Below, one piece after another: positions 551-62,492 of a DNA stretch of 64,000 bases. Each line of letters starts with the position of its first letter. Positions within the stretch are counted from its first letter, which is position 1. Location: the IMG/VR virus record IMGVR_UViG_3300036770_008729, positions 217,115-281,114 of that record, one strand, 5' to 3'. The translations under genes and the position numbers were made by a program. Below the pieces are notes generated by a model. That model made no database searches. It had not been told where the DNA came from and worked only from the letters and a program-made list of their open reading frames with translations.

Positions 551-2245
551 ATGAAATGGATTAAAACTAGAAAACAATTTTTGATAGAAGCTATCGAGGA
601 TGAAATATTCCCTAGACAAGCTGAAGCGATTAAAAGGACTTGGGGTGAAAAATATTTAAAAATGACCAAGCCTCCTGTATCAAATGAACTTAAAAAATAT
701 GAAGGTAAATGGAAATTATCCGAAGAAGATAAATTAAAAATGCTAGGATCCTTCTTTCAATGTGATATGAAGGTCATTTTTGATAATATTGCTAGTTTAC
801 CAGATAAGTTTTGTTATACGATTGCTCAATCAATTAGTATTCCACAAACTCCAGAGCCTGAAAAGTATGAAGTAGTTCTAAAAGACTTCAATATGAAAGA
901 ACCTTCTATTGACCAAATTGTAGCAATTTTTGATAACATTTTCCGAAAATTAAATGTTAATGAAACAATTAGTGATTCTATGATTCAAAAAGATGAATCC
1001 GGAAGACCAATTAGAGATTCAGAAGGACAGATGGTAAAGGTTGCAAAAGAAAAAGGATCTCCTATTTTTACTAATAGTTGCACTAACATTACTTCTTTCT
1101 GTGATGATTACAACAGATGTTATCCAGATGAAAAAGTAGATACAAATATTTTCACTGAAAATAATATAAAAAGTTTAAGAAACTTAGCAAAAGAAGATTG
1201 TAACGGTAAATTAAAAGTAGATTTTGAAATTTTTAACAAAGATCTTTACTTATCATTTTCTCACAATGAGAAGGACATATTAAATATGTCTATATCAAAG
1301 TTCTACAATTCTTGTCAAAATCTTTATGATGGAGGATACAGAGAACAATTATTAGGTAATATATTTGATCCTAACTCAGCTCCAGCATTTATGACATTTG
1401 ATACTCCTATTTTCTGGGGAGATGAAAAGGTATCAGATCAATTACCTCTTTCAAGAACAGTAATAAGAAATATTGAGAATTTTGATGGGTCTAGTCGAGG
1501 TATTTTCTTTGATAGAACTTATCCTGATAGATGTGAAAAAGTATTCAAAGAGTTATTAGTTAAGTATAGCAAAATGCAACAAACAATAACAGATAGAGAT
1601 TCTGTTACTTACTTATTTACACCAGACATCGATCCATCAGACACAGGAGTTAAAACTCCTTATATGGATAGATTAGGTGTTGATAGAAAACCAATGATTG
1701 GAGTAAATTGTAAAGCACTTTACTTATCAAGAGTAGGTGATTGGTCTGGTATAAAGATTTCACCAAATGCAAAGATTAAAGAATTAGTGGTTGAAACAAC
1801 CGAAATTCCTCAGAACTTATTTGACCTTAAATTAAACTTAGATTGGATTAAATTTAAGTATTTACATTTGAAAGATTTAAAACCATTTGGTGGTTTATTC
1901 ACTGATTCAGTTGCTTTTGATAAATGTAAATTAAAGAATGAAGTTCTTCAAGAAAGAAAAGAAACTAAGAAGTTACAATTAATCAGTTGTGACATCGATG
2001 CGATTGATTTGTCTGGTTTCTCTAAATTAGAAGAGTTACACTTATTGTTAACTTTAAAAGATATAGATGAACTTAAAAGAACACTTACAGGAACTAAACT
2101 AAAAAAGTTAGTTATCTCTGATGAAATATTAGGATTCTCTAAAAAAGATAGAAAAATGAGAATGTCTGAAGAAGCTTCTCAATTCATCGAAGGATTAAAA
2201 AGAACTGGTGTGTCAGTAGAAATAAAAGGAATTTATAATAAATAA
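551..2245 (+). CDS. Hypothetical protein, LRR-like C-terminal region, N-terminal tag family
   Basis: 564 aa; LxxLxL repeats (LSGFSKLEELHL); TAATATATA at 535-543. Confidence 0.6.
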   Translation: MKWIKTRKQFLIEAIEDEIFPRQAEAIKRTWGEKYLKMTKPPVSNELKKYEGKWKLSEEDKLKMLGSFFQCDMKVIFDNIASLPDKFCYTIAQSISIPQTPEPEKYEVVLKDFNMKEPSIDQIVAIFDNIFRKLNVNETISDSMIQKDESGRPIRDSEGQMVKVAKEKGSPIFTNSCTNITSFCDDYNRCYPDEKVDTNIFTENNIKSLRNLAKEDCNGKLKVDFEIFNKDLYLSFSHNEKDILNMSISKFYNSCQNLYDGGYREQLLGNIFDPNSAPAFMTFDTPIFWGDEKVSDQLPLSRTVIRNIENFDGSSRGIFFDRTYPDRCEKVFKELLVKYSKMQQTITDRDSVTYLFTPDIDPSDTGVKTPYMDRLGVDRKPMIGVNCKALYLSRVGDWSGIKISPNAKIKELVVETTEIPQNLFDLKLNLDWIKFKYLHLKDLKPFGGLFTDSVAFDKCKLKNEVLQERKETKKLQLISCDIDAIDLSGFSKLEELHLLLTLKDIDELKRTLTGTKLKKLVISDEILGFSKKDRKMRMSEEASQFIEGLKRTGVSVEIKGIYNK

Positions 2246-2246
2246 T

Positions 2247-3881
2247 ATGAAATATCTAAAACTATTTGAAGCTTTCGAATCGACTATATTAAGTAAAACT
2301 TTATCTTTCATCAAAGATGAAGAGTCTAAGAAACAATTCATGTTTGCACTAGACAAGATTTGTTCTACAATTGATTATCCTAAATCTGAGTTAAAAGATG
2401 AATACTTTCAATACTTATCATTTTACCCAGCACTTAAACTAAGTGCTAAAACAGGTGATGAACCTTGTGAAGCTTTATCACGTGATTCTTATCCAGACTA
2501 TGCAGTTGATGGGGCAAAGTGTAAAGGAGGTAAAGTATTAAGAAAGTGGGGAGCAAGAACAAGAGAAGTTGAATGTAGTATATGTAAAGGAACTGGTGTT
2601 AAACCAAAGAAACCTGAAATTAAGTTAGTTAAGTTTTGGTTTTCAACAGAAGGTAAATATATTGCTGTTACAGCAGTTGATGGCTTAATAAGAAACACAA
2701 CGACTTCATCAACCGCGAGAGGGTATTCTAAAGACTATCAAGATTATATAGTAGTTAACACCACTGAAGATTCTAGAGAACTACAAACTGGAATGATAGT
2801 TAGAGTTACTATTAATGGAAGACCTACTATTTGTTATATTGTTAAAGATAGAAATACTTATCCATATGCAATACAAGATGAACACAGTGGATCCACACCA
2901 GATAACATACCTTCTAGAAACTGGAGGAATTTTGGACATAGTTCTTGGCACTTATCAAGAGGTGAATACAGAGGAACAATTGAAATACTTGAACCAAAAA
3001 GTAAAGAAGAGGTTATTGTAGAACCAAATCCTTATACTTGGAATGCAACGCTTAGCTTATCTGGTTATTCAGGTATGAAAGTAGATATTTATTCTGATGT
3101 TCAAGAAAAAATTAAGGATGCAAACTTTGCTATTGTTTTAGATTTCGGTAAGATGAAACAATCAGAATTCAAAACTACTTATTCAACGAGAAGTGAAAGA
3201 GAAGAATCTAGAACTGGTGCATTAGCATTAGAGAAACCTGAAGATATAAAAGCAACTAACATTGAAAGATATATTAAAAGTTTATCTGATAAAGTTGCAA
3301 GTGGAGATGAATTAACAAAAGTAACAAGAGTTATTCCAAGATTAATGGGTGGAAGAAATATTTTGCTTTATATTGGTATGAATAGAAATCTTTCAACTAT
3401 TGATAGTTTAGCTACACGACTTTATAGATTTATTACAGAAGATGAGGACAATAAAGAATACAATGCAAGAGAAATAGTAGCAACAATAAAAAACTCATAC
3501 AAACAAAATCTACAATTTACTACTGATTTAAATGAAGTTTTAGATGAAGTAAGAAAACAATTACAAAAACCAGGAAAAGAAGCTTATTTATCAACATTTG
3601 ACAAAATGTTAGAGATATCACAAAAGATAAATGATAAAGTATTTTCAACAGAAGTTAAATCTATTGAAGATATTGAATACATCTATCAAAAATTGAGGAC
3701 AATTCAAAATATGTTACAATCCAGTCGTAATCCAGCAAATAGATTGAGATACTTTATGGAAAGATTAAGTTATCTAACTACTGATAGATGTGTATCTAGA
3801 ATTTTAGAAATTGACCAAGATGAAATACCAAGTATAATTGAAGGTCTAGAATCAATTGGAAGATTTGTTGAGAGAGTTTAA
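2247..3881 (+). CDS. Hypothetical protein with MKYLKLFE tag and CxxCxGxG motif
   Basis: 544 aa; CSICKGTG DnaJ-type zinc motif. Confidence 0.6.
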   Translation: MKYLKLFEAFESTILSKTLSFIKDEESKKQFMFALDKICSTIDYPKSELKDEYFQYLSFYPALKLSAKTGDEPCEALSRDSYPDYAVDGAKCKGGKVLRKWGARTREVECSICKGTGVKPKKPEIKLVKFWFSTEGKYIAVTAVDGLIRNTTTSSTARGYSKDYQDYIVVNTTEDSRELQTGMIVRVTINGRPTICYIVKDRNTYPYAIQDEHSGSTPDNIPSRNWRNFGHSSWHLSRGEYRGTIEILEPKSKEEVIVEPNPYTWNATLSLSGYSGMKVDIYSDVQEKIKDANFAIVLDFGKMKQSEFKTTYSTRSEREESRTGALALEKPEDIKATNIERYIKSLSDKVASGDELTKVTRVIPRLMGGRNILLYIGMNRNLSTIDSLATRLYRFITEDEDNKEYNAREIVATIKNSYKQNLQFTTDLNEVLDEVRKQLQKPGKEAYLSTFDKMLEISQKINDKVFSTEVKSIEDIEYIYQKLRTIQNMLQSSRNPANRLRYFMERLSYLTTDRCVSRILEIDQDEIPSIIEGLESIGRFVERV

Positions 3882-3882
3882 A

Positions 3883-9569: not shown

Positions 9570-9584
9570 ATACTATTTTAATAT

Positions 9585-12673: not shown

Positions 12674-13399
12674 TTAAGGCACATTTCTGTAAATCACCGC
12701 AAGCTCCAACACACCATCACCAATCAGCCTCCAATCATCCACATATTTCCTATCAGGATCACCCTCATAAAGAGGTCCCCAATATATTATCCTCCCTCCT
12801 AAATACGACTCTAAATGCTCTAACTCACCCGACATATCCTCCACACTAAATGCGTAATTATTAGACACACAAGACCAAGCACCATCAGACATAGTTGAAT
12901 GATAAACCACAAAACCCTCTTCATCCTTCTTGAAAGCAAATATATCATCTATGTATTGAAACATATCTGAATAAATATCAACACTCTCATTAAACTTCCT
13001 TATATGTTTCATCACGGGTTTTATTTTTTAGAAATTATAAATTTCTAGTTTAATCCATCTCCTATCATCATTCACAACAACAGAATAACCTATCTTTACT
13101 TGAGGGAATTCCATTTCCACTCTTTTAATAGAAACCTTTATCTCATTACAAAATTCCTGCAACCTGGAAGATTTCTGTATATAAGAATCTAAAAATTCCA
13201 CTAAATCTTTATCAACACCCAATTCTCTTGGAGTATTAACCATACTAGGCACCGGTACCATTATCTCATAATATGGATGTGAATACTGAGGTGGTAGTTT
13301 AACCTCTTTAGCATTCCAATCTTCAATAAGATTGAGAAATATATAATGAATTGATAAAAACCCTTCATTAGATTCATTATATTTCTTTAAGTGTCTCAT
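12674..13399 (-). CDS. Two N-terminal-tag family proteins (12674-13015, 13028-13399)
   Basis: MKHIRKFNES, MRHLKKYNES. Confidence 0.6.
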
Positions 13400-14153: not shown

Positions 14154-14477
14154 ATGACATCCCAAGAAATCAAACTCTACGGCAGACAAATAGTAGAATC
14201 AATCACCAAAAGCGATATACCATACACCGATATCAATAAATGTAAAGAATTTCATATCGATTTCTCATTTCCAAGCTGGTCAATAGGCAAAGGCACAAAC
14301 CCTAATCATAATATACTCGGACACTCACATATAATACTAACCTGGAACGCAATGCCTCATAAAAAATCCAGCATAATATGGACTAACCTAAAACAAATAA
14401 AAACAACTGAATTAAACTCAATTATAGAAGCAATTAAAAGAGATATAAAATTAAATACAATACTAATCCATAACTAA
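14154..14477 (+). CDS. Hypothetical protein with C-terminal tag
   Basis: KRDIKLNTIL. Confidence 0.55.
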   Translation: MTSQEIKLYGRQIVESITKSDIPYTDINKCKEFHIDFSFPSWSIGKGTNPNHNILGHSHIILTWNAMPHKKSSIIWTNLKQIKTTELNSIIEAIKRDIKLNTILIHN

Positions 14478-14969
14478 AAACCATAAATGAATAGGTACAT
14501 AACTATTACAAATAACATCACCATTATCATTTAAATAAGATATACGACTATTTAACTTCGATACCAAATCATATACCCTAGATATCAACATATCCGTAGA
14601 ACTAAAATTCTCCTTACTCAACATCTCCTGACTACCAAAATAATTCCAACCCCATAACACAACCGGCTTCATCTCATAATCAGATATAACATTTAATATA
14701 TGCTGAACTAAATCACCTCCTCTTAACGATTCATCTAAATCATTCCAACTCATAGAAGAATAATCACATGCAAATGAGACATCTATCACCTTCTTTCCAT
14801 AAATACTCTTTGGAATACTACCACTTACCATTATAGCAAATCTATGAGGCTCACCATTTAATAAAAATTCCTTTACTCCAATCTTACTCTTTATTAAATC
14901 AGATAGTGGCCTTAACTCAGATGATTTTAAACCCGATTCAAATATTTTATACTCTTTTATATGTTTCAT
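14463..14969 (-). CDS. N-terminal-tag family protein
   Basis: MKHIKEYKIFES. Confidence 0.6.
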   Translation of the reverse strand: MKHIKEYKIFESGLKSSELRPLSDLIKSKIGVKEFLLNGEPHRFAIMVSGSIPKSIYGKKVIDVSFACDYSSMSWNDLDESLRGGDLVQHILNVISDYEMKPVVLWGWNYFGSQEMLSKENFSSTDMLISRVYDLVSKLNSRISYLNDNGDVICNSYVPIHLWFLVMD

Positions 14970-23823: not shown

Positions 23824-24363
23824 TTAAAAATTCAATTTAGGTTTTAAAATTGTTCCACCTTTCTGATTAGACTTCCAATCAGATGCTGAGCTATGTGTCT
23901 TATCTTTTTGTTTATCAAAACCAAAAGAGGTATATGAACTTTTAGCAGTCATACCAATTTTCGCCAAGTGTTCGAATTTTTCTTGATCCATTTCACCCAC
24001 AGTAATTATAACAGCCTTTATAATGCTTTTAGTTTCTTCACCAAAGTCTTGGAGATTCCTGTTGATTCCATCTCTTCTATCTTGAAAGTATTGTCGAGCT
24101 TCTAAATATGGAGTTCTTTCATCAAGCTTCACATCATTTGATACTTCATTTGTAAATACAAGACAAGCTGCTAAAAACTTTTTTTGTGTTGATTTATCTT
24201 CAATTGACTTTTCAATAGTATTTAGTGGTTTACTCATCTGATTCGCAACTGCTGTTGTTGAAACACCACCTAAAAGTGCAATACTTGCTAGTAGATTATG
24301 ATACCAAGCTTCATTGATACTTTGATATTCATTATAATTTTTTACAAACTTCATCTTTTTCAT
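23824..24363 (-). CDS. N-terminal-tag protein with hydrophobic segment
   Basis: MKFVKNYNEYQSINE then LLASIALLGG; start reassigned. Confidence 0.6.
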   Translation of the reverse strand: MKKMKFVKNYNEYQSINEAWYHNLLASIALLGGVSTTAVANQMSKPLNTIEKSIEDKSTQKKFLAACLVFTNEVSNDVKLDERTPYLEARQYFQDRRDGINRNLQDFGEETKSIIKAVIITVGEMDQEKFEHLAKIGMTAKSSYTSFGFDKQKDKTHSSASDWKSNQKGGTILKPKLNF

Positions 24364-24477: not shown

Positions 24478-24996
24478 TTAACTCTTTTTTGTTAACCATT
24501 CTTTGTTAATACGCTCACGTTCACGATTCACATAATAGCGTTTGGTATATATATACTTTTCTCTTAATGACTCAGGTACTTTTGAATATTCCACTTGAGT
24601 TTCAGGAAAAATTAATGAAGAATTTACTGATATTTCAGGTAAAGTTCTTAGCTGAGGTTTTACTAATTCTTTATTTACTTTTGATTCCCATTCACTATGA
24701 TACTCCGACATTACTGATTCTGGTTCCATATCTTCTCTATACATAACATATAATTTTAATCTATATGAACCCATTTGCATAGAATCAGATATTGCAAAAT
24801 TGACAGTTTTTTCATCATTAAGGTATAAATTTTCATTCTCATTTAAAGAATTAACAATATTAACTTTCCAACCATTTTTTTCTAAATGTAATTGTAAGCC
24901 TTCTATAAAATCTTTCATTTTATGATCAATGTGTTCAGAAGTCTTTTGTATAGATAACCAGTTTTCAAATAACTTAATATACTTTAGATTTTTCAT
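24478..24996 (-). CDS. N-terminal-tag family protein
   Basis: MKNLKYIKLFEN. Confidence 0.6.
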   Translation of the reverse strand: MKNLKYIKLFENWLSIQKTSEHIDHKMKDFIEGLQLHLEKNGWKVNIVNSLNENENLYLNDEKTVNFAISDSMQMGSYRLKLYVMYREDMEPESVMSEYHSEWESKVNKELVKPQLRTLPEISVNSSLIFPETQVEYSKVPESLREKYIYTKRYYVNRERERINKEWLTKKS

Positions 24997-25181: not shown

Positions 25182-26492
25182 TTATTGTTCATCTGATAGA
25201 GAGTAGTTGATTTCATCCAGAATTGAATCGGTTGGGAATTTTTCTCCTCTTTTATTATAAAAGAAACCATCTCTAAATTTTACCAATTCGGAATCATCAT
25301 TCATATTATCAGGTAATACACAATCATTCCATAATTCGATAATTTGATTAGGTGTAGTAGTTTTGCCAATTTCCACTCTTAATACTTCGAGTTCTTCTGG
25401 AATTTCAATTTGGGGTTCTTGCTCTGATTTAGCTCCTTGTTCTGCTTTTATACGAGCTTCTATTTCTTTGGCATGATCTTCTAAGTTCTTTGCTGAGGCA
25501 TCTGCCTTTCTAATAGGATTGCCTTTTTCGTCCTTAATTAGATTGCCGTCTTTATCTAAAAGAAAGTCTTCTTCATATTCTGGTAGCAACCCTAACTTTT
25601 TACGTTGTTCTAAATCTTTTTTATCTCTTTCTCTAATACCAGCAGCGGCTCTTTTATAAGTCTCTGGATTTAATTCTTCATTAACGAATGATTCAAATAA
25701 TTTTAGGTATTTCATATTATTTTTACTTTCAGCAACTGATTTTTCAGACTCATCAATTACTCTTTTAAGTTCAGCTGTATTATCAACACTAACAACTTCA
25801 TCAAATCCTTCTTTTGATAAAACATCTTTTATTTTTTCTTCATCAAAAGGAATGCCTTTATCATCTTGTAAGTCATATGATGTAAACATTCTATCAAATG
25901 CAGCAGGTGGTATAGTTTTAGATTTACCTTTAGCTTTCATTTCTTCTGATCTTTTAGCTGCCATTTTTTTGATAATTTCTTCAGCTCCTTTGAAGTTAAA
26001 AACAACTGCTACTTTATGATATTCGCCTTCAACACCTTCAATAACTTTAAGTGCTCCTTTTCTTGAACCAGAGTTCATATTGGTCATATCGACTACAATA
26101 TTTTCTTTTCCTTTACCTTCGGCAATTCTTTTGTTAAATATATCTTGAATTTTACCGTTAGCTTCTAAAACTCTATCATAAGAAAGTGGTGCCCAAGTCA
26201 TATAAGCTGGTGATTTAATAACGGTGCCATATTTTTCATTTTTATCACCTTCTTTTTCAACATCTTTAATGGGTAATGAGAAAAGGTCATCATATGTCCA
26301 ACCATACTCTGCATACTCTTCAGCAACTTTTTCGACAATATCATCTCTATTTATTACAAATGGTTGTATTTCACCAAATTTGGTTTTTATCCAAGTTGAT
26401 TTACCTACAGATGGAGGTCCAATAAGAACATATATTGTTTTATCTTTAACTTCTTCACCTTCAAATACTCTGAAATTTTTAATATTCCTCAT
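25182..26492 (-). CDS. P-loop kinase (AAA_33/PNK-like) fused in frame to a second tagged module
   Basis: GPPSVGKS, INRDD, VVDMTN; internal MKYLKLFES at 25715. Confidence 0.8.
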   Translation of the reverse strand: MRNIKNFRVFEGEEVKDKTIYVLIGPPSVGKSTWIKTKFGEIQPFVINRDDIVEKVAEEYAEYGWTYDDLFSLPIKDVEKEGDKNEKYGTVIKSPAYMTWAPLSYDRVLEANGKIQDIFNKRIAEGKGKENIVVDMTNMNSGSRKGALKVIEGVEGEYHKVAVVFNFKGAEEIIKKMAAKRSEEMKAKGKSKTIPPAAFDRMFTSYDLQDDKGIPFDEEKIKDVLSKEGFDEVVSVDNTAELKRVIDESEKSVAESKNNMKYLKLFESFVNEELNPETYKRAAAGIRERDKKDLEQRKKLGLLPEYEEDFLLDKDGNLIKDEKGNPIRKADASAKNLEDHAKEIEARIKAEQGAKSEQEPQIEIPEELEVLRVEIGKTTTPNQIIELWNDCVLPDNMNDDSELVKFRDGFFYNKRGEKFPTDSILDEINYSLSDEQ

Positions 26493-36398: not shown

Positions 36399-36649
36399 TT
36401 ATTTATATTTAGAATACAAAAGTAGTAAAAATGAGACAATTGACAAATAAATCTTTAAGATTATCTTTATGATGTATATACGTGCCGCCCTCGAGTTACC
36501 CCGTGGTTTTACCCCCGCCCTTCATACTTCAATAAACTATCGGCAAATACTTTATCTTTTCTGACATAACAAATATAAGGACTATTTTTGTAATTTTCAA
36601 AATTTTAATCTTTTTTTAATATATAGTATATAAAAATTAACATCACAAT

Positions 36650-38630: not shown

Positions 38631-40698
38631 ATGAAATACATTAAAACATTCGAGAGTTATGATGAATTTCCTGATATGTTTAATAACACACTGATGAGAG
38701 GAGTCAAAACTGATAAAGATGAATATATCGATGATCCTAAGTTGAGAAATATTAACACCGGTGCTTCATCTGATAAAAACTATTTAGAATTCCTGAAGAA
38801 CTATATAAAATTTGGCATTCCTGATCCAACTAAATCAATTCATATGTTTTTTAGACCAAATAGAGATTCAATTGATATGATAAGTTTTTATGGAAATTCA
38901 TATAGAGTAATTCCACAAGAGGGTACCGTATTCGGATTTAATAGAGAGATGAGAAATGGTGGATTGGGTAGTACATGGTTTTATCCACAAAGAACAATAA
39001 AAAAATACTTAGGTAAAGATCTAAATATAGATTTAGAATCAATGAGTAATGATGAGATTACTGAATATCAAAAAATGCTAATTGATAGTGGTGTAGTTGG
39101 TATATTGACTTATGAAGAATTACTTAAAATGTCTACGGAAAAAGGTGAACCTTTACAGGTTTGGACTGAATCACCTTGTTTACATAAAAAAATTTAATCA
39201 AACATATGAAATACATTAAAACATTCGAGAGTTATAATCAATCAGAGAAAGTTGATGAAAATCTTAAATCATTCATCGCTGGTACTCTATTATCATTATC
39301 ATCATTGTTTCCTGGTAAAGCAGATGCTTTTATAGGAGGTGGTGTTTCAGGTGGTCATGTTGTAGCAACAACTAACCATTCAATTAATACTCAAGAGATA
39401 AAGGATGATAGTCAACAGATAAAAGATGATATAACAGATCCAGTATTGAAAGATATAAAAAAATCAATAGATGATGGTATACAATCAAAGGCTGAAATTG
39501 ATAGTATTATAACTAAACTTAAAGCATATGCAGATAAAAACAATTCTCATAGTGATGTTAAAAAAGTATTGGAAGATTTATCTAAAATAGATTTCAATGG
39601 AGATAAAGAAGTAGTAAAAGGTGACTTACTGAAAATAATTATTAAGTTAAATGAAATGCAAAAAAGTGGATCCTTTTCTATTAATGATTTAATGGTCATT
39701 GCTATTTTATTACTTTTTTTAACACTTTTCATTAAATTGATGAATGAAAATGATTAATGGGTAAATGAATATGAAACGAATTAAGAAATTTAATGAAAAT
39801 AATCTGGATTTAGATTATGATTATATCTATAATTGTTTTGCAGAACTTATAGACGATAATAAAGCTTCTATAAGAAATTTTCAAAATGACCATCAAAGAT
39901 ATATTACCATAGATTTAAAGATGAAACCTTTTTCATCAGTTGAGGTAGGCACCAGTTCGAGATTTAATAGAACTCCCGTAGGACCGACTGAAAAGATTAT
40001 CAATTCTAAAATATTTGATTATATAGATGGTGTTAAATACAACTATGATTTACTTAAAGAAGTTGAAGTTGGATTGACGAGATTATCAGAAGAATATCCA
40101 GAGTATATAACTAACTTTGAGATATTTGATAATGTAAACTCAATTCATATTAATATATTTAATAGTTGGAGGACTTACATTAAAGAATAGAGTCTAATTT
40201 CATTTTTCTAAATTCTGATAGCGAAAACAACCCACGCATTTCATCTTCATTTAAGGTAATTGAATATCTACCCTTTTTAGAATTTTGTTCATCTATAATA
40301 CTTTTCATAGCATTCTTTATTAAAGTTAATTAATATTTTTTTTAATATATACATTATAAAATTATATTAAAAATATGAAACATATTAAAAAATTCAATGA
40401 AGGATATCTTAGTGTTTATAATGCTAAACCTATGGAAATAAACGATGCATTTGTAGGGGTTTTGTCAGCATTGGCTACTTTAGAGACTTCTTTAGAAAAA
40501 AGCGAGTTTAAACAAGGAATTCATGATCCAAAAAAAGGAATTGAAGTTCAAAGAACTAAAGAAGAATTCCTTAAGGCTGTCGAAGACATTGCAAAAGAAG
40601 TTGACTCACTTAAATCAGAATATGAAGGATCTCTTGGTAGAGGTGGTACTATGAATGTAGTCGGTAAAGGTGGTGTTTCTCAAACAAGAAGTTATTAA
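38631..40698 (+). CDS. Four N-terminal-tag family proteins (38631-39197, 39206-39757, 39765-40190, 40375-40698)
   Basis: MKYIKTFESY x2, MKRIKKFNE, MKHIKKFNE. Confidence 0.65.
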
Positions 40699-47295: not shown

Positions 47296-47371
47296 CATTT
47301 TGATACAATCTATTTTTTTATAATAATTATAATATTATATATACATAACTAAAATAACTTTAGTTTAAATT

Positions 47372-47917
47372 ATGAAATACTTAAAATTATTTGAAGACTT
47401 AGAAGAAGACAACTCAAAATATCTTATCGAATTATCATCTGCTAATAGCAGAGGTATTATGGATATGACTAATCCATCAGAATCAATTAAAAAAGGTGCT
47501 GAAGAATGGTGGTCACTTAATGTTGATGCTATCGTTAAATTAGAAATGTATAATAGATACAAGAATTTATCAAATGATATTTTAACAAAACTAATTGGAT
47601 GTAGAAGTGATGTTTATAAATTTGGTCCAAGTTATCTAAGAGCTATTGGTGATTTATCTGAACAAGATATAAAAAGATTTAGATTTACCGGAACTTCTGA
47701 TAAAAACTGTGAAGATACTTATAAGATACTATCCAGAGTTGTAAAGAAGTTCAAGAGAATGAAATTAGACCAGAAAATTTCTTTTTTTGGTGAATTAGAA
47801 AGTGATGAGTTTTTAATTGTAAGAAATTCATATATCTATAAAGTAGTAGATGGGAAGAATCTAATGAATGAAGTCATGGGTATATCAAACAAATTAGATA
47901 TTATATCTCAGGAATAA
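47372..47917 (+). CDS. N-terminal-tag family protein
   Basis: MKYLKLFED. Confidence 0.6.
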   Translation: MKYLKLFEDLEEDNSKYLIELSSANSRGIMDMTNPSESIKKGAEEWWSLNVDAIVKLEMYNRYKNLSNDILTKLIGCRSDVYKFGPSYLRAIGDLSEQDIKRFRFTGTSDKNCEDTYKILSRVVKKFKRMKLDQKISFFGELESDEFLIVRNSYIYKVVDGKNLMNEVMGISNKLDIISQE

Positions 47918-49510: not shown

Positions 49511-50422
49511 ATGAAGTATTTAAAGTCATTTAGAATATTTGAATCAGCTAGTAAAAGTGTTTTTTACAATGAGCTAATGGGTAAGTTATTACACCTTTAT
49601 GGTTCTATTCCAGTTCCTAAAGAAAAATCGTCCGTTGTTATAAGTAAGATTATTTATAATTCAATGGGTAAGTTATTTAAGTTAGGAGAGAATGTGGATA
49701 TTAACTTTTGTAAATTACATGATAGAATTAGATTCAGTGATTACTTTGATTCTTTATTAGAAGATAAAGATGTAAGAGGTCATAATTTTGAAGGATTGGT
49801 TTCTGGTCTATTTGGTGGTAAGTTATCTGCTAGAGGAGCTAAATGGGATGTTACGTTAGATGGTTTGAAATATAGTGTAAAGTTTGTGGATAATAAAGGA
49901 AAGGCACCTGAGATTGGTAGATTTAAATATCTTATTAAGGCAAATCCAGAGATAGATAATAAAGTGATGGATGCTGGTGGACTTACTAGAGTTTTTCAAT
50001 CATCTGACTCAGAACTTAAGCTAGATGTTTGGAATTTAATTTCAAAAGATATAGAAGGATGGATAATGGCTTATCCAGATAATATAGAAAATCCAAATAA
50101 TATAGTTATCAACAAGATAGATAAGGCTGAAATGTTTAACTTATTAAATAAGGCGTGTGTTGTGTCACCAAAAGGTGGTTATAGTGATTGGTATTCACTT
50201 GCTTTAAGTTCTACATATGTAAAGAAAGGGGTTTTTACAAGCAGTGTGGTTAAGATACCAAAGGTGACTTTAGATGAGTTACAAGAAGAGATGAAAGCAG
50301 TACAATCAGAAAAATGGGCTGAATCTGTATTTGGTGAGATGGGAAATAAGATAAGACCGGATGTATTGAGATATATCAGAGCTAATAAAGATATGGTGAT
50401 AAAAAGATTAAGTCAGATTTAA
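49511..50422 (+). CDS. Tagged protein with PD-(D/E)xK nuclease-like motifs
   Basis: RGHNFEGL...KWDV...YSVK. Confidence 0.4.
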   Translation: MKYLKSFRIFESASKSVFYNELMGKLLHLYGSIPVPKEKSSVVISKIIYNSMGKLFKLGENVDINFCKLHDRIRFSDYFDSLLEDKDVRGHNFEGLVSGLFGGKLSARGAKWDVTLDGLKYSVKFVDNKGKAPEIGRFKYLIKANPEIDNKVMDAGGLTRVFQSSDSELKLDVWNLISKDIEGWIMAYPDNIENPNNIVINKIDKAEMFNLLNKACVVSPKGGYSDWYSLALSSTYVKKGVFTSSVVKIPKVTLDELQEEMKAVQSEKWAESVFGEMGNKIRPDVLRYIRANKDMVIKRLSQI

Positions 50423-52804: not shown

Positions 52805-53808
52805 ATGTCTCAATTTTATTCTACACTTTTAGGAACATTAATAGATTGGACCGATTCTGAAATTGCTATCGGTAAAAAATTTCTTGATTGGAACGAAGTT
52901 TCTATAAACTGGGAAGAGGTAGACTTGCACTGGGAAGATGTTTTTATACTGTTACAAAGAAGAGGAGGTTCTGGTGGTCAAGGTAGAGGTGATCTGCAAA
53001 AAGAGTTAGAAAAACTTTATCAAGAAGGTAATCCTTGGAAAAAACTATCTGAGATTAATCCAGAAAAAGGCGAAAGGTTAATTAAAGTTATTTGCAAAAT
53101 GAAAGGAATTGAATACTCAACTATTTTAGAAAAAAAGGATGGTGTTAGAGTTTTAATTAATGATTTTGTCAGAAAAGAAAATAAAGTGAGCGTAAAAGTA
53201 AAATTTTAATTTTTAATATATATCTTATGAAAAAAGACATTCTTACATTTAATGATTTCTTAAGTGATAAACCAACAATCAATTCACACATTGATGATTT
53301 ACAAGATATTACTGAAAACATTGAAGAAATTTTAGAAGAAGAAACAACTGAAGAGGAATTTAATTTATCCATTGATAAGTTAAATCTATTGAAAGAAGAA
53401 TTTGAATTAACTGACGATGAAATTAATAAAATCTCAAGTAATACAAAGAAATCAGAGGATGATGATTTTTACAAATTATGGAGGGACATCAATGAAAAGT
53501 TTGAATGTGATATCTTTATCGAAGGTGCTAGACATGAAGAAACAGAGGTTAGATTAGTAATTGAATCAGAAGATTGGAATTTAATATTCAGAGGATATAT
53601 ACAGGACGGTAAATGTCATATACCAATTAAGAAACTTGAAATATTAGAAGAGAATCTAATCGGTGATATAAAATTAGAGGTTATAGCAGAAGGTAGTGTA
53701 TTTATTCCGTGGAGTGGAAAGTTTGTTGTTAAGTCGTCAAAAAATATAAAAACTCTAAATGAGGGATTGAGACCTAAGATTGGAGTTGAAGTAGGTAAAG
53801 TAAAATGA
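52805..53808 (+). CDS. Two hypothetical proteins (52805-53209, 53227-53808)
   Basis: Each preceded by TAATATATA. Confidence 0.6.
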
Positions 53809-54220: not shown

Positions 54221-54718
54221 ATGAGGTATATAAAAAGTTTTCATATTTTTGAAAATAAAAATAGTCCAGAAGTAGTATCTTACCTACAAGAGATATTGGA
54301 TAGTGCAAAGTTAGATGGATTCAAAGTTAATTTTAGCATTAACGATCCTAATTTGTTTCTTAGAGGATTTGCCAGAGTCGTTGGTGCTGGAAAAATACCA
54401 GACATCAATATTAATTTAGAAAAAAATCCAGTAGTTGGATATAATGAAATAGGTCCTTATATTGATCATGTCTTTAGTTATCTCATTGAACAAAAATATA
54501 CAATATATGATTTTTCTGTTTCTACAGTTCATCAAGGAGTTACAGATAATAGAATACCATATAAGTATCCAAGTCATTTAGTATTTGTAAAAGAGGGAGT
54601 TGTTAAAATACCTAATTCTACAGATAAAACATTTGATTGGGTTTATGAATATTTCAACACACCTAAAATGGAAGACGCTTTAGTGAAATCGGTATCAATT
54701 TCATTTGTAAAATCCTAA
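54221..54718 (+). CDS. N-terminal-tag family protein
   Basis: MRYIKSFHIFE; start reassigned. Confidence 0.6.
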   Translation: MRYIKSFHIFENKNSPEVVSYLQEILDSAKLDGFKVNFSINDPNLFLRGFARVVGAGKIPDININLEKNPVVGYNEIGPYIDHVFSYLIEQKYTIYDFSVSTVHQGVTDNRIPYKYPSHLVFVKEGVVKIPNSTDKTFDWVYEYFNTPKMEDALVKSVSISFVKS

Positions 54719-55243
54719 ACTAAATGCTTCTATCTGTAATTTATTTTGGTCAATAGGATCTCTACCTGTCATATGATAATTGGCTTGTTCTTTATCATTT
54801 AAAAATTGTCTAATACTCTGAAAATCTTTGAAATATAAAAATCCACCATATCCACCCCGACGATTGAAAATTTTGATTTTTGAATAGATATAGTTTGGAA
54901 CTAAACCATAAGCCGAATTTAAATAAGAGGAAAAATAATTATAATAAGTATCTAATTCATCAATATTGAATAACTCGATTTGACCGGATTTAGCTTCAAG
55001 ATTAACCGTAAAAGAATTATTATTGAATGGTTGTAAAACATATTTATTCAATTCAGATGAATTGATATAAAATTGACCTGTTTCTCTTTCTTTCTTATCA
55101 AAATCTATAATAAGAGATGATGATAGACTTAAAGTAACATTGAAATTTAGTTGTTTAAAGTCAATTAATCGGTCTTCAACTTCTTCTAAATCAATTTCAT
55201 CTTTAAGTGATTCAAAAATTCTAAAGGTCTTAATCCATTTCAT
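54701..55243 (-). CDS. N-terminal-tag family protein
   Basis: MKWIKTFRIFES; start reassigned. Confidence 0.6.
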   Translation of the reverse strand: MKWIKTFRIFESLKDEIDLEEVEDRLIDFKQLNFNVTLSLSSSLIIDFDKKERETGQFYINSSELNKYVLQPFNNNSFTVNLEAKSGQIELFNIDELDTYYNYFSSYLNSAYGLVPNYIYSKIKIFNRRGGYGGFLYFKDFQSIRQFLNDKEQANYHMTGRDPIDQNKLQIEAFSLGFYK

Positions 55244-55268: not shown

Positions 55269-55808
55269 ATGAAATTTATTTCATCTTATAACTTATTTAA
55301 AATTAATGAGTCTTCACAAGAAGAAGCATGGGAATTAGTTGGCCAATCGCACCCAGTAATTAGCTTTACTGTAAATTCATTAGGTTATAGTTTTGATGAA
55401 GAATCGGTTATTAGATTGAGTGCTATTATAAATGGTCTCCCAGAGTATTTAGCAAATTACTATCATATTAAGGACTTCGAAAATTTAGAAAATAAAGATA
55501 GTGATATTGGTCTTTTACAAAAAATGAAAGAAATATCTACTCTACCAAATGCTAGAAATCTTTACAGAAAACTAATGCTACAAAGAGATTTGATGGATGT
55601 TGATAATGAAGGTAGACCGAGAAAAAGAAGTTATAATGTGGTAGAAAATTTTGATAGAATTTTATCGAGTCAATATGAACCACCGGTAATATTTTATGAT
55701 GGAGAAAAGTATTATGTAGTAGGAGGTAGAACTAGACTTTTTGCATCGGTTGCTGCTAATGTTCCAATTAGAGTAAAGATTTTAACTAAAGAAGACTTAG
55801 TAGTATAG
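55269..55808 (+). CDS. ParB/Srx-like domain protein with tag
   Basis: PPVIF...YYVVGGRTRL. Confidence 0.55.
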   Translation: MKFISSYNLFKINESSQEEAWELVGQSHPVISFTVNSLGYSFDEESVIRLSAIINGLPEYLANYYHIKDFENLENKDSDIGLLQKMKEISTLPNARNLYRKLMLQRDLMDVDNEGRPRKRSYNVVENFDRILSSQYEPPVIFYDGEKYYVVGGRTRLFASVAANVPIRVKILTKEDLVV

Positions 55809-55919: not shown

Positions 55920-56540
55920 TTATGCTATTGAATCAAAACGTTTTATAGAAAATGGCCCTACTTGTTTTTTGATTGATGGATCATTTTTACCTAATCTTTT
56001 TCCTCTTTTTTCTCTCAGTCTCAAAAACCTTTCTTTCTGAGTTCCACGAATTTCAGAATCGCCAAGATTTAAAGCACCAACAGCTTTATCATCGGCGAGT
56101 TTGAATTCAGAGTCTGTTGTTTCTTGTTTCTCAATTTCTTCTGTTGGATTTACTGGTGTTGGTTCAACTTCAACTGGTTTTTTTATTTCACCTAAGATTT
56201 CACCTACAAGTTTTTCAAAAGTATCAACAACTGATTTATATTTTCTACCATCAGTTCCACTAAGCCAAATACCTCTATTTGTTTGTGAAATAATTTTAGT
56301 GATGAAGTTTTTCCAAAGACCTACTTCTCTTTTAGCTCTTGATAAATCATTATACTTACATTCTCTTTCTAACTTATCAAGTCTCATTTGAATTTCTTTA
56401 GCTTCTTGTTTATATCTCTGAGGAACCATAGATTCGTAAGCCATTAATAAAACTCGTTTGGTCTTATTGATATGATTAGTCAATTCTCTAGTGTCTATTT
56501 GATTAGAGGTTGATTCGTTGAATGTCATTAAGTATTTCAT
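55920..56540 (-). CDS. N-terminal-tag family protein
   Basis: MKYLMTFNES. Confidence 0.6.
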   Translation of the reverse strand: MKYLMTFNESTSNQIDTRELTNHINKTKRVLLMAYESMVPQRYKQEAKEIQMRLDKLERECKYNDLSRAKREVGLWKNFITKIISQTNRGIWLSGTDGRKYKSVVDTFEKLVGEILGEIKKPVEVEPTPVNPTEEIEKQETTDSEFKLADDKAVGALNLGDSEIRGTQKERFLRLREKRGKRLGKNDPSIKKQVGPFSIKRFDSIA

Positions 56541-57600: not shown

Positions 57601-57662
57601 TGAAGTATATATAAAATTTAGAAATTGAATCTTTTTTGAAAATTCAAATTAATATATAAACT

Positions 57663-57923
57663 ATGAAATATTTAAAATTATTTGAGGATTTTGAAGAAGG
57701 AGCTGAAGTCGAAATCCATGATGAACCATCAGGAGATACTGATGATGTAAAGGTAAAAGGTCATGATTTGACTATTGCTCAATTGAAGCAACAAGGATTT
57801 GTAATCGGGAGCTTTGCATGTGAAGATGGTGAAGTTGTTATGATCAACGGAATGGAAGCTGACGAATGGTTAGATAACCAAGGACCTATGGAAGGAACAG
57901 AAGAAAGTCCAGATAATTATTAA
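57663..57923 (+). CDS. Acidic N-terminal-tag family protein
   Basis: MKYLKLFEDF; TAATATATA 57650-57658. Confidence 0.6.
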   Translation: MKYLKLFEDFEEGAEVEIHDEPSGDTDDVKVKGHDLTIAQLKQQGFVIGSFACEDGEVVMINGMEADEWLDNQGPMEGTEESPDNY

Positions 57924-61207: not shown

Positions 61208-61233
61208 TTGTCTGTTTTTTTAGTTTGATAAAT

Positions 61234-61746
61234 CTACCCTTCGGTCATCGCACCACCGGCAGCACCAATCATAGATGAAACAAAAGCTGTTCCCATCAAT
61301 ATTCCAATAAGATTACCTAATGTACAAAGGCCACCTAAAACCATTACAAATCCACTTCCAACTATTGCGATTTTAATTACAGCAATTAGTAATCCAACAA
61401 ATGAGATAGCTGCAACTGAGTAACCTAACCATTTAAGAATTGTCCCAACAACTTCTTTTGCCCCCTCATCTACTTTTCCACCTGGATCAGTTTTAGGATC
61501 AGGTAAATTTTCCTGATTAGCGATTTCTCTAGTTCTCTTCTTGTCCTCTTCTGGTAAAGCTGCAAAAGCCTTTTTAGCCTCTTCTAATTTTTTCATAGCT
61601 TCTGGATTCTTCTCGATAGCTTCAACCATTTTATTACCCAATTCCTGTTTTTGTTTTTGCCACCAAGCTTTTACAGCTTTAAGAAACTCCTCCTCATTGA
61701 TAGGCTCAAATTGACTGAAATTTTCGAAAGTTTTAACGTATTTCAT
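61234..61746 (-). CDS. Tagged protein with C-terminal TM hairpin
   Basis: MKYVKTFENF...INEE; hydrophobic C-terminus. Confidence 0.65.
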   Translation of the reverse strand: MKYVKTFENFSQFEPINEEEFLKAVKAWWQKQKQELGNKMVEAIEKNPEAMKKLEEAKKAFAALPEEDKKRTREIANQENLPDPKTDPGGKVDEGAKEVVGTILKWLGYSVAAISFVGLLIAVIKIAIVGSGFVMVLGGLCTLGNLIGILMGTAFVSSMIGAAGGAMTEG

Positions 61747-61895
61747 AACAATGTTTTTTATTTTTATTATTTATATATTAACTTTCTAAAGTGATTTTTT
61801 CGAATAAAAGGCTATAAAATTTATAAAATATTAAAAAAAGTAATAAAAATGAGATTTAAAAGTAAATATATAAATTATAAAAAAAAATTAAAATT

Positions 61896-62492
61896 ATGAG
61901 ATACATAAAAACATTTGAATCGTATTCGATTAATGAAAATGAAAATTCAGCAGTAGGGGATGTTAAAACACCTGAGGCTGAAACAGCTAAAAAAGAAATG
62001 GTAGCTGCAGTTGCTGAGGAGATTAAAAAGAATCCTGAAGCTCAAAAACAAGCTGGTCAACAGTTGGAAGATATTTCTAAAAAATTTGGTTTATCAGTTG
62101 AAGACTTAAAAGATCCAGCTAAAGTTGTTGCAGCAGCTGAGAAAAATCCAGCTCTTAAACAAGCATTGGAAGCTTTAGTTCAAGCAACAAACGAGGCAAT
62201 TTCATATTTTGGATATGATAGTCTAAACGAAGAAATTGATTTTGGTAAAATCAAAAATTGGATCAAAGAAAAAGGACAAAAGTTTGCAACAGCACTTGGT
62301 ATGACAGGACTCTTTGGAACAATATTGGGTGTAGCATTAACAGTTGGTACAGGAGCTGTAGCATTTGCAGCAGCTGCTCCAGTAGCTGCTGGTGCATTGG
62401 CTATATCAGCTTTAGCACTTGCAATTGGTGGTAAAAAAGGTGCGGCTGATATAGGTTGGACTGGTGGAGGATCAGGAGGAAGATATTCGTAA
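61896..62492 (+). CDS. Tagged protein with C-terminal TM hairpin
   Basis: MRYIKTFESYSINE; Gly/Ala-rich hydrophobic C-terminus. Confidence 0.65.
   Translation: MRYIKTFESYSINENENSAVGDVKTPEAETAKKEMVAAVAEEIKKNPEAQKQAGQQLEDISKKFGLSVEDLKDPAKVVAAAEKNPALKQALEALVQATNEAISYFGYDSLNEEIDFGKIKNWIKEKGQKFATALGMTGLFGTILGVALTVGTGAVAFAAAAPVAAGALAISALALAIGGKKGAADIGWTGGGSGGRYS

What the first reader, a model, noticed from the sequence alone, without database searches (positions are those of the whole stretch)
551..62492. More than 25 unrelated proteins share an N-terminal MK(Y/H)(L/I)KxF(E/NE) tag resembling a capsid-targeting sequence
Examples at 2247, 13015, 13399, 14969, 24996, 34488, 36650, 38631, 39206, 40375, 47372, 49511, 54221, 55243, 56540, 57663, 61746, 61896; often followed by (I/L)NE(E/S), and most are preceded by TAATATATA. 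Established: T4 internal proteins use a ~10-aa capsid-targeting sequence cleaved after Glu by the prohead protease. Inference: a large packaged and injected protein arsenal including a kinase, ART-like, nuclease-like, ParB-like and TM-hairpin proteins.
Basis: partly seen in the sequence, partly recalled or inferred. Interest (0 to 1): 0.72.

Follow-up and report, generated by a model that had tools for sequence, protein, structure and literature searches.

The report
Capsid-targeting-like tag in huge phage
About one in seven proteins of this huge uncultured phage starts with the same 8-11-residue peptide, which looks like the phage T4 tag that loads proteins into the capsid and is then cut off; if it works that way, these phages may inject the largest known set of proteins into their hosts.

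Summary
A position matrix for MK[YH][LI]Kx[FY]..[FN]E finds 26 tagged ORFs in the window. It finds 61 of 404 in the 281-kb record, 117 of 982 in the complete 642-kb relative LR756502.1, and 43 of 363 in a third relative. The tag sits almost only at true N-termini: 61/404 starts against 2/1250 internal Met. It is conserved as a peptide, because synonymous codons vary. About 75% of the protein bodies are unrelated; about 25% belong to one diverged paralog family. Nearly all bodies lack any Pfam or PHROG match.

The window's record is a fragment without head genes. Its relatives carry a T4-type portal, gp21-type protease and gp23-type capsid module. Their protease is fused to a scaffold-like repeat with [IL]AE every 14 residues. 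The tag ends in K-[LIF]-[FN]-E-[SN], which fits T4 gp21's (L/I)-x-E rule, and its aromatic spacing mirrors the T4 tag MKTYQEFIAE.

The T4-like capsid-targeting propeptide reading is the best explanation (about 0.55), but it rests entirely on inference. The specific claims of ART-, nuclease- and ParB-like cargo are unsupported; only a P-loop kinase domain is detected. Rivals are a Clp degron, a membrane helix, and a docking tag for another machine.

The parts
551..2245 (+). tagged ORF, 564 aa, MKWIKTRKQF (weak tag)
   Evidence: Matrix score 10.6. TAATATATA ends 7 nt before the ATG. The homolog in LR756502.1 starts MKWILPRNRFINE. No Pfam hit.
535..543 (+). TAATATATA promoter-like motif
   Evidence: One of 87 copies in the record.
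2247..3881 (+). tagged ORF, 544 aa, MKYLKLFEAFES
   Evidence: Score 24.6. Follows the previous ORF directly. The homolog in LR756502.1 is also tagged.
12674..13012 (-). tagged ORF, 112 aa, MKHIRKFNES; member of the diverged 'DDGF' family
13028..13399 (-). tagged ORF, 123 aa, MRHLKKYNES
   Evidence: Promoter motif 18 nt upstream.
14463..14969 (-). tagged ORF, 168 aa, MKHIKEYKIFES
   Evidence: AATATATA 4 nt upstream.
23824..24354 (-). tagged ORF, 176 aa, MKFVKNYNEY
   Evidence: motif 31 nt upstream.
24478..24996 (-). tagged ORF, 172 aa, MKN-LKYIKLFENW (tag offset by 3 residues)
25182..26492 (-). tagged ORF, 436 aa, MRNIKNFRVFEGEE, followed by a P-loop kinase domain
   Evidence: AAA_33 E=1.5e-8. 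PHROG polynucleotide kinase/ATPase. The homolog in LR756502.1 lacks the tag.
25680..25715 (-). second, internal copy of the tag (MKYLKLFESFVNEE) at residue 261 of the 436-aa ORF
   Evidence: Either an in-frame fusion of two tagged genes or an internal start.
30302..31132 (-). weakly tagged ORF, 276 aa, MSKEM-RKYINSFRKFNLLNE
   Evidence: Score 12.7.
33847..34125 (-). tagged ORF, 92 aa, MKD-LKHIRRFNESEE
34454..34462 (+). TAATATATA promoter-like motif
   Evidence: 25 nt before the ATG at 34488.
34488..35009 (+). tagged ORF, 173 aa, MKYLKLFENFRLNEE
   Evidence: Score 26.8.
36617..36625 (+). TAATATATA promoter-like motif
   Evidence: 24 nt before the ATG at 36650.
36650..37279 (+). tagged ORF, 209 aa, MKYLKLFDNFNLVKE
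38631..39197 (+). tagged ORF, 188 aa, MKYIKTFESY
39206..39757 (+). tagged ORF, 183 aa, MKYIKTFESY; one hydrophobic segment
39765..40190 (+). tagged ORF, 141 aa; tag Met at 39771, MKRIKKFNEN
40343..40351 (+). TAATATATA promoter-like motif
   Evidence: 23 nt before the ATG at 40375.
40375..40698 (+). tagged ORF, 107 aa, MKHIKKFNEG
47372..47917 (+). tagged ORF, 181 aa, MKYLKLFEDLEE
49511..50422 (+). tagged ORF, 303 aa, MKYLKSFRIFES
53227..53808 (+). weakly tagged ORF, 193 aa, MKKDILTFNDF
   Evidence: Score 11.4.
54221..54718 (+). tagged ORF, 165 aa, MRYIKSFHIFEN; 'DDGF' family; modelled
   Evidence: In the AlphaFold2 model, residues 1-14 have pLDDT<50 and the fold starts at residue 16. Orthologs keep the tag.
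54701..55243 (-). tagged ORF, 180 aa, MKWIKTFRIFES
55269..55808 (+). weakly tagged ORF, 179 aa, MKFISSYNLFKINES
   Evidence: Score 10.9.
55920..56540 (-). tagged ORF, 206 aa, MKYLMTFNES
57650..57658 (+). TAATATATA promoter-like motif
   Evidence: 4 nt before the ATG at 57663, so the mRNA has almost no leader.
57663..57923 (+). tagged ORF, 86 aa, MKYLKLFEDFEE (best score)
   Evidence: Score 27.7.
61234..61746 (-). tagged ORF, 170 aa, MKYVKTFENFSQFEPINEE; hydrophobic segments
61896..62492 (+). tagged ORF, 198 aa, MRYIKTFESYSINEN; two hydrophobic segments

Best explanation
The tag is a T4-type capsid-targeting propeptide. Its first half, M-K-[YH]-[LI]-K-x-[FY], is an amphipathic segment with no acidic residue. 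It is proposed to dock the newly made protein onto the scaffold core of the assembling prohead. Its second half, K-[LIFYV]-[FN]-E followed by S/N/E/D, is proposed to be a site for the gp21-type prohead protease, which cuts after the Glu at position 8, 9 or 11 and frees the protein inside the capsid. The freed protein would then be packaged with the DNA and delivered into the next host cell. Shown here: the tag exists and is conserved as a peptide; it is modular; the clade has a T4-type head module; and the motif fits that protease's rule. Inferred: docking, cleavage, packaging and injection.
For: (1) The tag sits at 61/404 ORF starts but at only 2/1250 internal Met. It sits at 117/982 ORFs in the 642-kb relative and 43/363 in a third genome. 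Reversed-pattern controls match 0-1 times. (2) It is conserved as a peptide. Lys, Phe and Glu codons vary about as in the genome, and the substitutions are K/R, L/I/V, Y/H/W/F and F/Y. Orthologs 23-91% identical in the body keep the tag. (3) It is modular. The bodies form 142 BLASTP families among 178 tagged proteins. In the one large family, the linker between tag and domain varies from 0 to about 40 residues, and one paralog has no tag. The P-loop kinase homolog in the relative lacks the tag. In an AlphaFold2 model, residues 1-14 are unstructured and the fold starts at residue 16. (4) Relatives encode Portal_T4 (E=1e-58), a Peptidase_S77/gp21 domain with His85 and Ser140 conserved, and Gp23 (E=4.5e-28), side by side. 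Tagged genes lie directly upstream and downstream of this module. (5) The protease is fused to a 42-nt/14-residue repeat carrying [IL]AE about ten times, 40 [ILV]xE against 11 expected. This resembles T4 scaffold gp22, which has 20 such motifs including IFES and LFES, the same tetrapeptides that end many tags. (6) The first Glu is at position 8, 9 or 11 in 77-83% of tags. [ILVF]xE occurs within residues 6-20 in about 80% of tagged and 31% of untagged proteins, with no enrichment further in. (7) T4 IPII/IPIII start MKTYQEFIAE. In T4, targeting needs residues 4 and 7, processing needs residues 8 and 10, and gp21 cuts after L/I-x-E (PMC9026906). T4 internal proteins are diverse and share only this tag (PMC3012670). 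(8) Half of the tagged genes follow TAATATATA. Close variants precede the portal, protease, capsid and tail-fibre-like genes. (9) Tagged proteins carry fewer membrane segments than others (3/117 against 99/865).
Against: There are no proteomic, structural or genetic data for any phage of this clade, and no cultured relative exists. The window's own record holds no head genes, so the link rests on relatives. The T4 tags score negatively on this tag's matrix, so the likeness is one of pattern, not homology. The enrichment of hydrophobic-x-Glu is partly circular, because the matrix rewards Glu at positions 8-12. Sixty to 117 cargo species per genome is far beyond any known case. The proteins are acidic (median pI 5.2-5.3), whereas T4 internal proteins are basic. 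Related phages with a gp21-type protease (the 735-kb genome and Chryseobacterium phage MA9V-1) lack the tag. TAATATATA also precedes topoisomerase and methylase genes, so 'late' timing is not shown. A complex prediction of tag with protease-scaffold gave no verdict.
Confidence: 0.55

Rival explanations
1. The tag is a degradation or unfolding signal read by the phage's own Clp system, so that a large set of accessory proteins is removed at a set time.
For: The record encodes a ClpC/ClpB-type double AAA+ protein, its most conserved gene (83% identity to the relative), and an M28 aminopeptidase. The 642-kb relative has three ClpP genes and a small protein that looks like ClpS; that identification is by eye only. 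Position 3 is Tyr, Trp or Phe in 66% of tags and position 4 is Leu or Ile. These would be bacterial N-degron residues if Met-Lys were removed. Residues 2-7 hold no acidic residue.
Against: As encoded, the N-terminus is Met-Lys, which is not an N-degron. His at position 3 (26%) is not destabilising. The conserved K5, F7 and F10 and the Glu at 8-11 are not needed for ClpS binding. No precedent is known for tagging 12-15% of a proteome for turnover. No direct link between the tag and Clp was tested.
Confidence: 0.12
2. The tag docks proteins onto some other phage or host structure, or is a short amphipathic membrane-binding helix like the N-terminus of MreB. In this reading it has no role in the capsid.
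For: On a helical wheel, residues 3, 4, 7 and 10 form a hydrophobic face flanked by Lys (inference). The segment is predicted to be free of the folded domain. Tagged proteins are otherwise soluble.
Against: This reading does not explain the near-fixed Glu with a hydrophobic residue two places before it. It does not explain the match to the scaffold's cleavage-type motifs. It does not explain tagged genes inside the head module. No candidate receptor was found.
Confidence: 0.15
3. The shared N-terminus is only what remains of common descent. In this reading the proteins are one hugely expanded, fast-diverging paralog family, and promoter-plus-start cassettes are spread by recombination, without a signal function.
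For: About 25% of tagged proteins do fall into one family once profiles are iterated. A third genome has a 13-member paralog array with nearly identical tag codons. Tagged genes often lie in tandem arrays.
Against: About 75% show no similarity beyond residue 16 even with phmmer. Tagged bodies include unrelated known folds: P-loop kinase, lysozyme, SET, HNH and GNAT. The tag is far better conserved than the bodies among orthologs. Its distance to the N-terminus is fixed, while its distance to the domain varies.
Confidence: 0.08
4. The conservation serves the mRNA, for example start-region features that help translation of nearly leaderless transcripts in a host without Shine-Dalgarno pairing.
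For: In 18 tagged genes the promoter-like motif ends only 4-7 nt before the ATG. The commonest tag codons are all A/T-rich.
Against: Synonymous positions vary about as in the rest of the genome, and replacements keep residue class rather than bases. Untagged genes show the same 4-7-nt spacing. The pattern is position-specific at the residue level.
Confidence: 0.04

Closest known systems
Capsid-targeting sequence (CTS) of phage T4 internal proteins IPI, IPII, IPIII and Alt
   Same: Both are short N-terminal peptides shared by otherwise unrelated proteins. Both start M-K, have hydrophobic or aromatic residues spaced three apart, and end in hydrophobic-x-Glu. Both occur in phages with portal gp20, protease gp21 and capsid gp23 homologs, on variable accessory genes.
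   Different: There is no sequence homology; the T4 tags score negatively on this tag's matrix. There are 60-117 carriers per genome instead of about 4-6. The carriers are acidic rather than basic. The Glu lies in three registers (position 8, 9 or 11). Function is untested.
Long propeptides of head and ejection proteins of giant phages phiKZ, 201phi2-1 and SPN3US
   Same: These are giant phages whose heads hold tens of protein species. Many of those proteins are cut after Glu by a gp21-related protease, and their propeptides are thought to target the prohead (PMC5694885).
   Different: Those propeptides are mostly 80-160 residues long and differ between proteins. Here one 8-11-residue consensus is reused on more than 100 proteins.
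T4 scaffold gp22 and core proteins gp67/gp68
   Same: The relatives' protease-fused repeat has [IL]AE every 14 residues plus an acidic stretch. T4 gp22 has 20 [ILV]xE motifs, including IFES and LFES, and T4 gp67 has an acidic tail.
   Different: Here the scaffold-like region is fused to the protease in one 697-699-aa protein and is built from a regular tandem repeat. That it is degraded is an inference.
Cargo-loading peptides of encapsulins (from general knowledge, not tested here)
   Same: A short terminal peptide directs unrelated cargo into an HK97-fold shell.
   Different: Encapsulin peptides are usually C-terminal, bind the shell itself and are not removed.
Bacterial N-degrons read by ClpS and ClpAP
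   Same: These are N-terminal aromatic or Leu residues without nearby acidic residues. The phage clade encodes Clp parts.
   Different: An N-degron needs a free N-terminal Leu, Phe, Tyr or Trp. Here Met-Lys comes first, and further positions are conserved.

Membership tests
T4-type capsid-targeting propeptide | Short N-terminal peptide shared by proteins that are otherwise unrelated | tested here: met
   61 proteins form 58 BLASTP groups after the tag is removed; 178 proteins form 142 groups across two genomes. About 25% form one diverged family.
T4-type capsid-targeting propeptide | Phage builds a T4-type prohead (portal gp20, protease gp21, scaffold, capsid gp23) | tested here: inconclusive
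   Met in the relatives LR756502.1, G001 and G002. Absent from the window's 281-kb record, which is a fragment.
T4-type capsid-targeting propeptide | Peptide ends in the protease's site, (L/I)-x-Glu | tested here: met
   Relative to the first Glu, P3 is L/I/F/Y/V in about 80%. [ILVF]xE occurs in residues 6-20 in 82% of tagged against 31% of untagged proteins. This is partly circular.
T4-type capsid-targeting propeptide | Sequence similarity to the T4 tag MKTYQEFIAE | tested here: not met
   T4 IPI, IPII and IPIII score -9 to -17.5 bits on this tag's matrix. Only the M-K start and the spacing of hydrophobic residues and Glu agree.
T4-type capsid-targeting propeptide | Carriers are found in the capsid with the peptide removed | not testable with these tools
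   No cultured relative and no proteome exist.
T4 internal proteins (IPs) | Small, basic, DNA-associated proteins | tested here: not met
   Median pI of bodies is 5.3; 80% are below pI 6; median length is 188 aa.
ClpS-type N-degron | Free N-terminal Leu, Phe, Tyr or Trp | tested here: not met
   The encoded N-terminus is Met followed by Lys or Arg in 97%. Exposure would need an unknown trimming step.
Sec, Tat or lipoprotein signal peptide | Hydrophobic core of 10 or more residues after a basic start | tested here: not met
   Residues 8-20 are rich in Glu, Asp, Asn and Ser. Only 4 of 61 carriers have any hydrophobic segment.
mRNA start-region element | Conservation at the base level, including third codon positions | tested here: not met
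   AAA/AAG, TTT/TTC and GAA/GAG occur about as in the rest of the genome. Residue-class substitutions change first and second codon bases.

The most novel reading that the evidence does not exclude
A clade of 460-640-kb phages of Bacteroidetes (Mahaphage group) uses one 8-11-residue, protease-removable address tag. With it they load 60 to more than 117 different, mostly orphan proteins (12-15% of all genes) into the capsid and inject them with the DNA. This would be by far the largest virion-delivered effector set known in any phage, and a ready-made short tag for packaging foreign proteins.
Probability: 0.4. Interest if true: 0.85.

Novelty: new variant of a known kind. Interest (0 to 1): 0.7.

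Why it matters
If the tag works like the T4 capsid-targeting sequence, a simple sequence rule would name the injected protein set of the largest known phages. That set has no other annotation: over 90% of carriers lack any Pfam or PHROG family. It would turn more than 100 orphan genes per genome into candidates for host take-over and anti-defence functions. It would also show how a huge phage scales up protein delivery, and it would give a short tag for loading cargo into large capsids. Even if the capsid reading is wrong, a peptide address on 12-15% of a viral proteome points to an undescribed sorting or turnover system. No paper in the searched library mentions the motif.

Tried and rejected
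- Complex prediction of the first 30 residues of a tagged protein with the 697-aa protease-scaffold protein of relative G002 returned 'no answer' (score 0.00). This is no evidence either way.
- Fold searches of that model against the PDB and viral models gave nothing significant (best E=0.009, TM<0.45). The fold of the largest tagged family stays unknown.
- Pfam and PHROG scans of all 26 window carriers and 35 other carriers found only AAA_33/polynucleotide kinase, RNA ligase (a borderline tag call), GATase and L5_gp82. No ART, nuclease or ParB domain was found.
- Searches of the window's record for Peptidase_S77, Gp23, Terminase_6N and Portal_T4 were empty. PHROG scans of 30 large proteins found no capsid gene.
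- Co-occurrence of the tag with the long protease fusion did not discriminate, because tagless relatives also have long gp21-type ORFs.
- No RNA sequencing run holds the phage, so transcript starts and timing could not be read.
- DNA search against GenBank phages found only tRNA matches.
- A 'mobile promoter-tag cassette' idea was dropped. Near-identical tag codons in G001 are explained by one 13-member paralog array.

Full report
**What the window is.** The 64-kb window is the last part of a 281,114-bp IMG/VR virus record. It has about 30% G+C, 23 tRNA genes and no close DNA relative among GenBank phages. By protein similarity, its nearest relatives are the uncultured 634-642-kb phage genomes LR745206.1, LR756502.1 and LR756504.1; topoisomerase II is 57-77% identical. 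These lengths match the largest genomes of the 'Mahaphage' clade, which is predicted to infect Bacteroidetes (PMC7162821). The record is collinear only with the 400-620-kb part of LR756502.1. It lacks capsid, portal, protease and terminase genes. One of its proteins also lies on a 598,435-bp contig elsewhere. The record is therefore most likely a fragment of a genome of about 600 kb, despite a completeness estimate of 94%.

**Checking the observation.** I built a 14-column matrix from ORFs that match M-[KR]-x-[LIVMF]-[KRM]-x-[FY]. The information lies at positions 2 (K/R), 3 (Y/H/W/F), 4 (L/I/V), 5 (K/R), 7 (F/Y), 8 (E/N/K) and 10 (F/Y).
- At 10 bits or more, the matrix finds 61 of 404 ORFs in the record and 26 in the window. 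It finds only 2 of 1250 internal Met positions.
- A strict degenerate DNA pattern matches 28 times in the record, against 0 for the reversed control.
- The tag's ATG follows an in-frame stop by 0-10 codons in nearly all cases, so no longer N-terminus is possible.
- Several 'untagged' proteins carry weaker versions, for example MIKRYQEYITE and MKIIKFTEFINE. The count is therefore a lower bound.

**Peptide or nucleic acid?** Within the tag, AAA/AAG, TTT/TTC and GAA/GAG occur in about the genome-wide ratios. The replacements that occur keep residue class (K/R; L/I/V; Y/H/W/F; F/Y) while changing first or second codon bases. Orthologs from public metagenomes that are 53-91% identical to the window protein at 54221 read MKYIKSFQIFEN, MKYLKSYQFFEN, MRYIKSFHIFEN and MKHIKSFAIFEA. 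All 34 retrieved members of that family start with the tag. Selection therefore acts on the peptide.

**Are the proteins unrelated?** Mostly.
- Without their first 16 residues, the 61 proteins form 58 BLASTP groups.
- The 178 tagged proteins of this record and LR756502.1 form 142 BLASTP groups, or 135 with phmmer.
- Iterated profiles join 45 tagged proteins plus 13 with weak or mis-called tags into one family. That family has a second motif (D-I-L-x-D-L-x-D-D-G-F); two window members are 12674-13012 and 54221-54718.
- Within this family, the tag stays at the N-terminus while the linker to the domain varies from 0 to about 40 residues. One paralog has no tag.
- An AlphaFold2 model (mean pLDDT 77.7) leaves residues 1-14 unstructured (pLDDT<50) and starts the fold at residue 16. 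The fold has no significant match.
- The only window carrier with a known domain is the 436-aa ORF at 25182-26492 (AAA_33; polynucleotide-kinase PHROG). Its homolog in LR756502.1 starts directly at the P-loop strand, without a tag.
- In LR756502.1, tagged proteins include a T4-type lysozyme, SET, HNH, GNAT, PQ-loop and Toprim-like domains. Only about 9 of 111 have any Pfam hit.
The tag is thus a modular add-on, placed mainly on orphan proteins.

**Distribution.** LR756502.1 has 117 tagged ORFs of 982, and G001 (276 kb, 25% G+C) has 43 of 363. The strict pattern matches 30, 26 and 11 times in LR745206.1, LR756504.1 and LR756500.1. It matches 0 times in the 735-kb LR756501.1, Salicola phage SCTP-2 and Chryseobacterium phage MA9V-1. 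Controls match 0-1 times. One exact variant of the tag's DNA occurs on 17 further IMG/VR contigs, most of which carry several tagged ORFs. The tag is therefore specific to one clade.

**The head module of the clade.** In LR756502.1, G001 and G002, three genes lie together. They are a Portal_T4 protein (E about 1e-58), a 697-718-aa protein whose first 190 residues are a gp21-type Peptidase_S77 domain, and a Gp23-type major capsid protein (E=4.5e-28).
- The protease keeps T4 gp21's His85 and Ser140. It also keeps a Glu-Ser pair (T4 ITE-S; here LNE-S or INE-S) near the end of the domain.
- Its C-terminal extension holds a 42-nt tandem repeat (9.7 copies). The repeat encodes N-I-[AS]-Y-S-E-Y-[IL]-A-E-N-L-D-K, so [IL]AE recurs every 14 residues. 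An acidic stretch follows.
- The protein has 40 [ILV]xE motifs against 11 expected.
- T4's scaffold gp22, which gp21 chops at L/I-x-E, has 20 such motifs in 269 residues, including IFES, LFES, LFEE and IAEA.
I infer that the extension is a scaffold made to be cut into short peptides, and that the T4 cleavage rule holds in this clade.
- Tagged genes lie directly upstream of the portal (LR756502.1 221232 and 222007) and downstream of the capsid gene (G002; a degenerate copy is on an acidic 172-aa protein of LR756502.1).

**Anatomy of the tag against the T4 precedent.** Read from the T4 record, IPII and IPIII start MKTYQEFIAE and IPI starts MKTFKEF. According to PMC9026906, ten residues suffice for targeting. 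Residues 4 and 7 matter for targeting, residues 8 and 10 for processing, and gp21 cuts after L/I-x-E. PMC3012670 describes the T-even internal proteins as diverse defence proteins that share only this tag.
- Here, residues 2-7 hold no acidic residue, and hydrophobic or aromatic residues sit at positions 4, 7 and 10.
- The first Glu is at position 8, 9 or 11 in 47/61 and 97/117 proteins.
- Anchored on that Glu, P4 is K/R (about 75%), P3 is L/I/F/Y/V (about 80%), P2 is F/N (about 80%), and P1' is most often Ser.
- [ILVF]xE is enriched only within residues 6-20: 82% against 31% in the record (p=2e-13) and 78% against 32% in LR756502.1 (p=4e-21). Part of this follows from how the set was chosen.
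- The T4 tags themselves score negatively on the matrix. The likeness is therefore one of design, not descent.

**Promoter-like motif.** TAATATATA occurs 87 times in the record, against 26 for the reversed control. In LR756502.1, 181 of 211 copies lie in the 6% of sequence that is intergenic.
- It lies within 80 nt upstream of 31/61 tagged and 40/343 untagged genes. The spacing to the ATG is bimodal, at 4-7 and 17-31 nt.
- Exact or one-off copies precede the portal, protease, capsid, Lcl_C tail-fibre-like and 'virion structural' genes.
- It also precedes topoisomerase and methylase genes.
It resembles the T4 late promoter TATAAATA (my knowledge). Co-expression with head genes is plausible but not shown.

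**Most likely mechanism.** The first half of the tag docks the protein on the scaffold core of the prohead. The gp21-type protease then cuts after the Glu. The freed protein stays in the capsid and enters the next host with the DNA. I put this at about 0.55. The points against it are these:
- There is no direct evidence.
- The number of carriers is without precedent.
- The carriers are acidic (median pI 5.2-5.3 against 5.8-6.2 for other proteins).
- Relatives with the same protease type lack the tag.

**Rivals.**
- Clp degron. The clade encodes a ClpC-like AAA+ protein (83% identical between the two genomes), an M28 aminopeptidase, three ClpP genes and a ClpS-like protein identified by eye only. 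If Met-Lys were trimmed, Tyr, Trp or Phe would be exposed in 66% of tags. This does not explain His at position 3, the conserved K5, F7 and F10, or the Glu (0.12).
- Docking on another structure, or membrane binding (0.15).
- Mere common descent (0.08).
- An mRNA feature (0.04).
These rivals fit fewer of the observations, as set out in the rival entries.

**Novelty.** The motif strings occur in no paper of the searched library, and the searches on capsid targeting in giant phages returned only papers on T4, P22, SPN3US and an unrelated DNA-modification study, none on this motif. I rate it a new variant of a known kind: a T4-style address tag reused on 12-15% of the proteome of the largest known phages.

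Its capsid-targeting reading is the best available but unproven. Its list of cargo functions is not supported, apart from the P-loop kinase and a few membrane-segment proteins.

Noticed in passing
LR756502.1 225272-227371 (L053:5272-7371); G002 copy L080:5747-7840: The gp21-type prohead protease is fused to a 42-nt/14-residue tandem repeat (N-I-S-Y-S-E-Y-I-A-E-N-L-D-K, about 10 copies) followed by an acidic stretch. It looks like a scaffold built to be cut every 14 residues.
   Followed up: partly
window 25182-26492 (-), internal tag at 25680-25715: A 436-aa ORF joins a tagged P-loop kinase to a second complete tag plus a member of the 'NEEL-P-x-TY' family. It is either an in-frame fusion of two tagged genes or an internal start.
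   Followed up: partly
window 40906-47296; also 28560-28636: There is an array of about 21 tRNA genes. A separate odd tRNA-Phe (anticodon AAA) call lies next to a tyrosine recombinase gene (28726-29526, Phage_integrase E=5e-39), which may mark an inserted element.
   Followed up: no
window 15479-17092, 21809-22444, 56959-57600, 58437-59087, 59088-59708, 59710-60375 (all -): A second shared N-terminus (MPKR[IL][FL]L / M.KRI.L..G) occurs on proteins that carry Lcl_C domains where tested. These are probably tail-fibre-like proteins with a common attachment end. Several are preceded by TAATATATA.
   Followed up: partly
window 9216-10433 (-) and 42473-43676 (+): An inverted duplicate of a gene pair: a Gly_rich_2 protein (starting MIRST...) plus a small protein starting MAHFA.I.
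   Followed up: no
G000 27826-29994 and 17205-18479; LR756502.1 58622-59143, 112104-112634, 364599-365000, 205052-205333: Phage-encoded Clp parts: a ClpC-like AAA+ protein, an M28 peptidase, three ClpP genes and a ClpS-like small protein.
   Followed up: partly
whole record G000: The 281-kb record, labelled provirus and 94% complete, lacks all head and packaging genes. It matches only part of a 642-kb relative, and a 598-kb contig with the same protein exists. It is probably a fragment.
   Followed up: yes
G000 58873-58902 (-): A decayed tag, MKHLKLFK followed by a stop, lies just upstream of a tagged 83-aa gene.
   Followed up: no
window 1-462 (-) and G000 216107-217576: A 489-aa protein with a tyrosinase domain (E=2.6e-26) runs into the start of the window.
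   Followed up: no
window 4571-4954, 5014-5322, 18392-18721, 18743-19342, 50526-50837: Small proteins carry Bacteroidetes-style signal peptides ending in FSQ. This fits the host phylum predicted for the clade.
   Followed up: no
window 34300-40300: Near-identical DNA is held by metagenomes labelled subsurface, freshwater and marine from several studies, so the phage or close kin is widespread.
   Followed up: no
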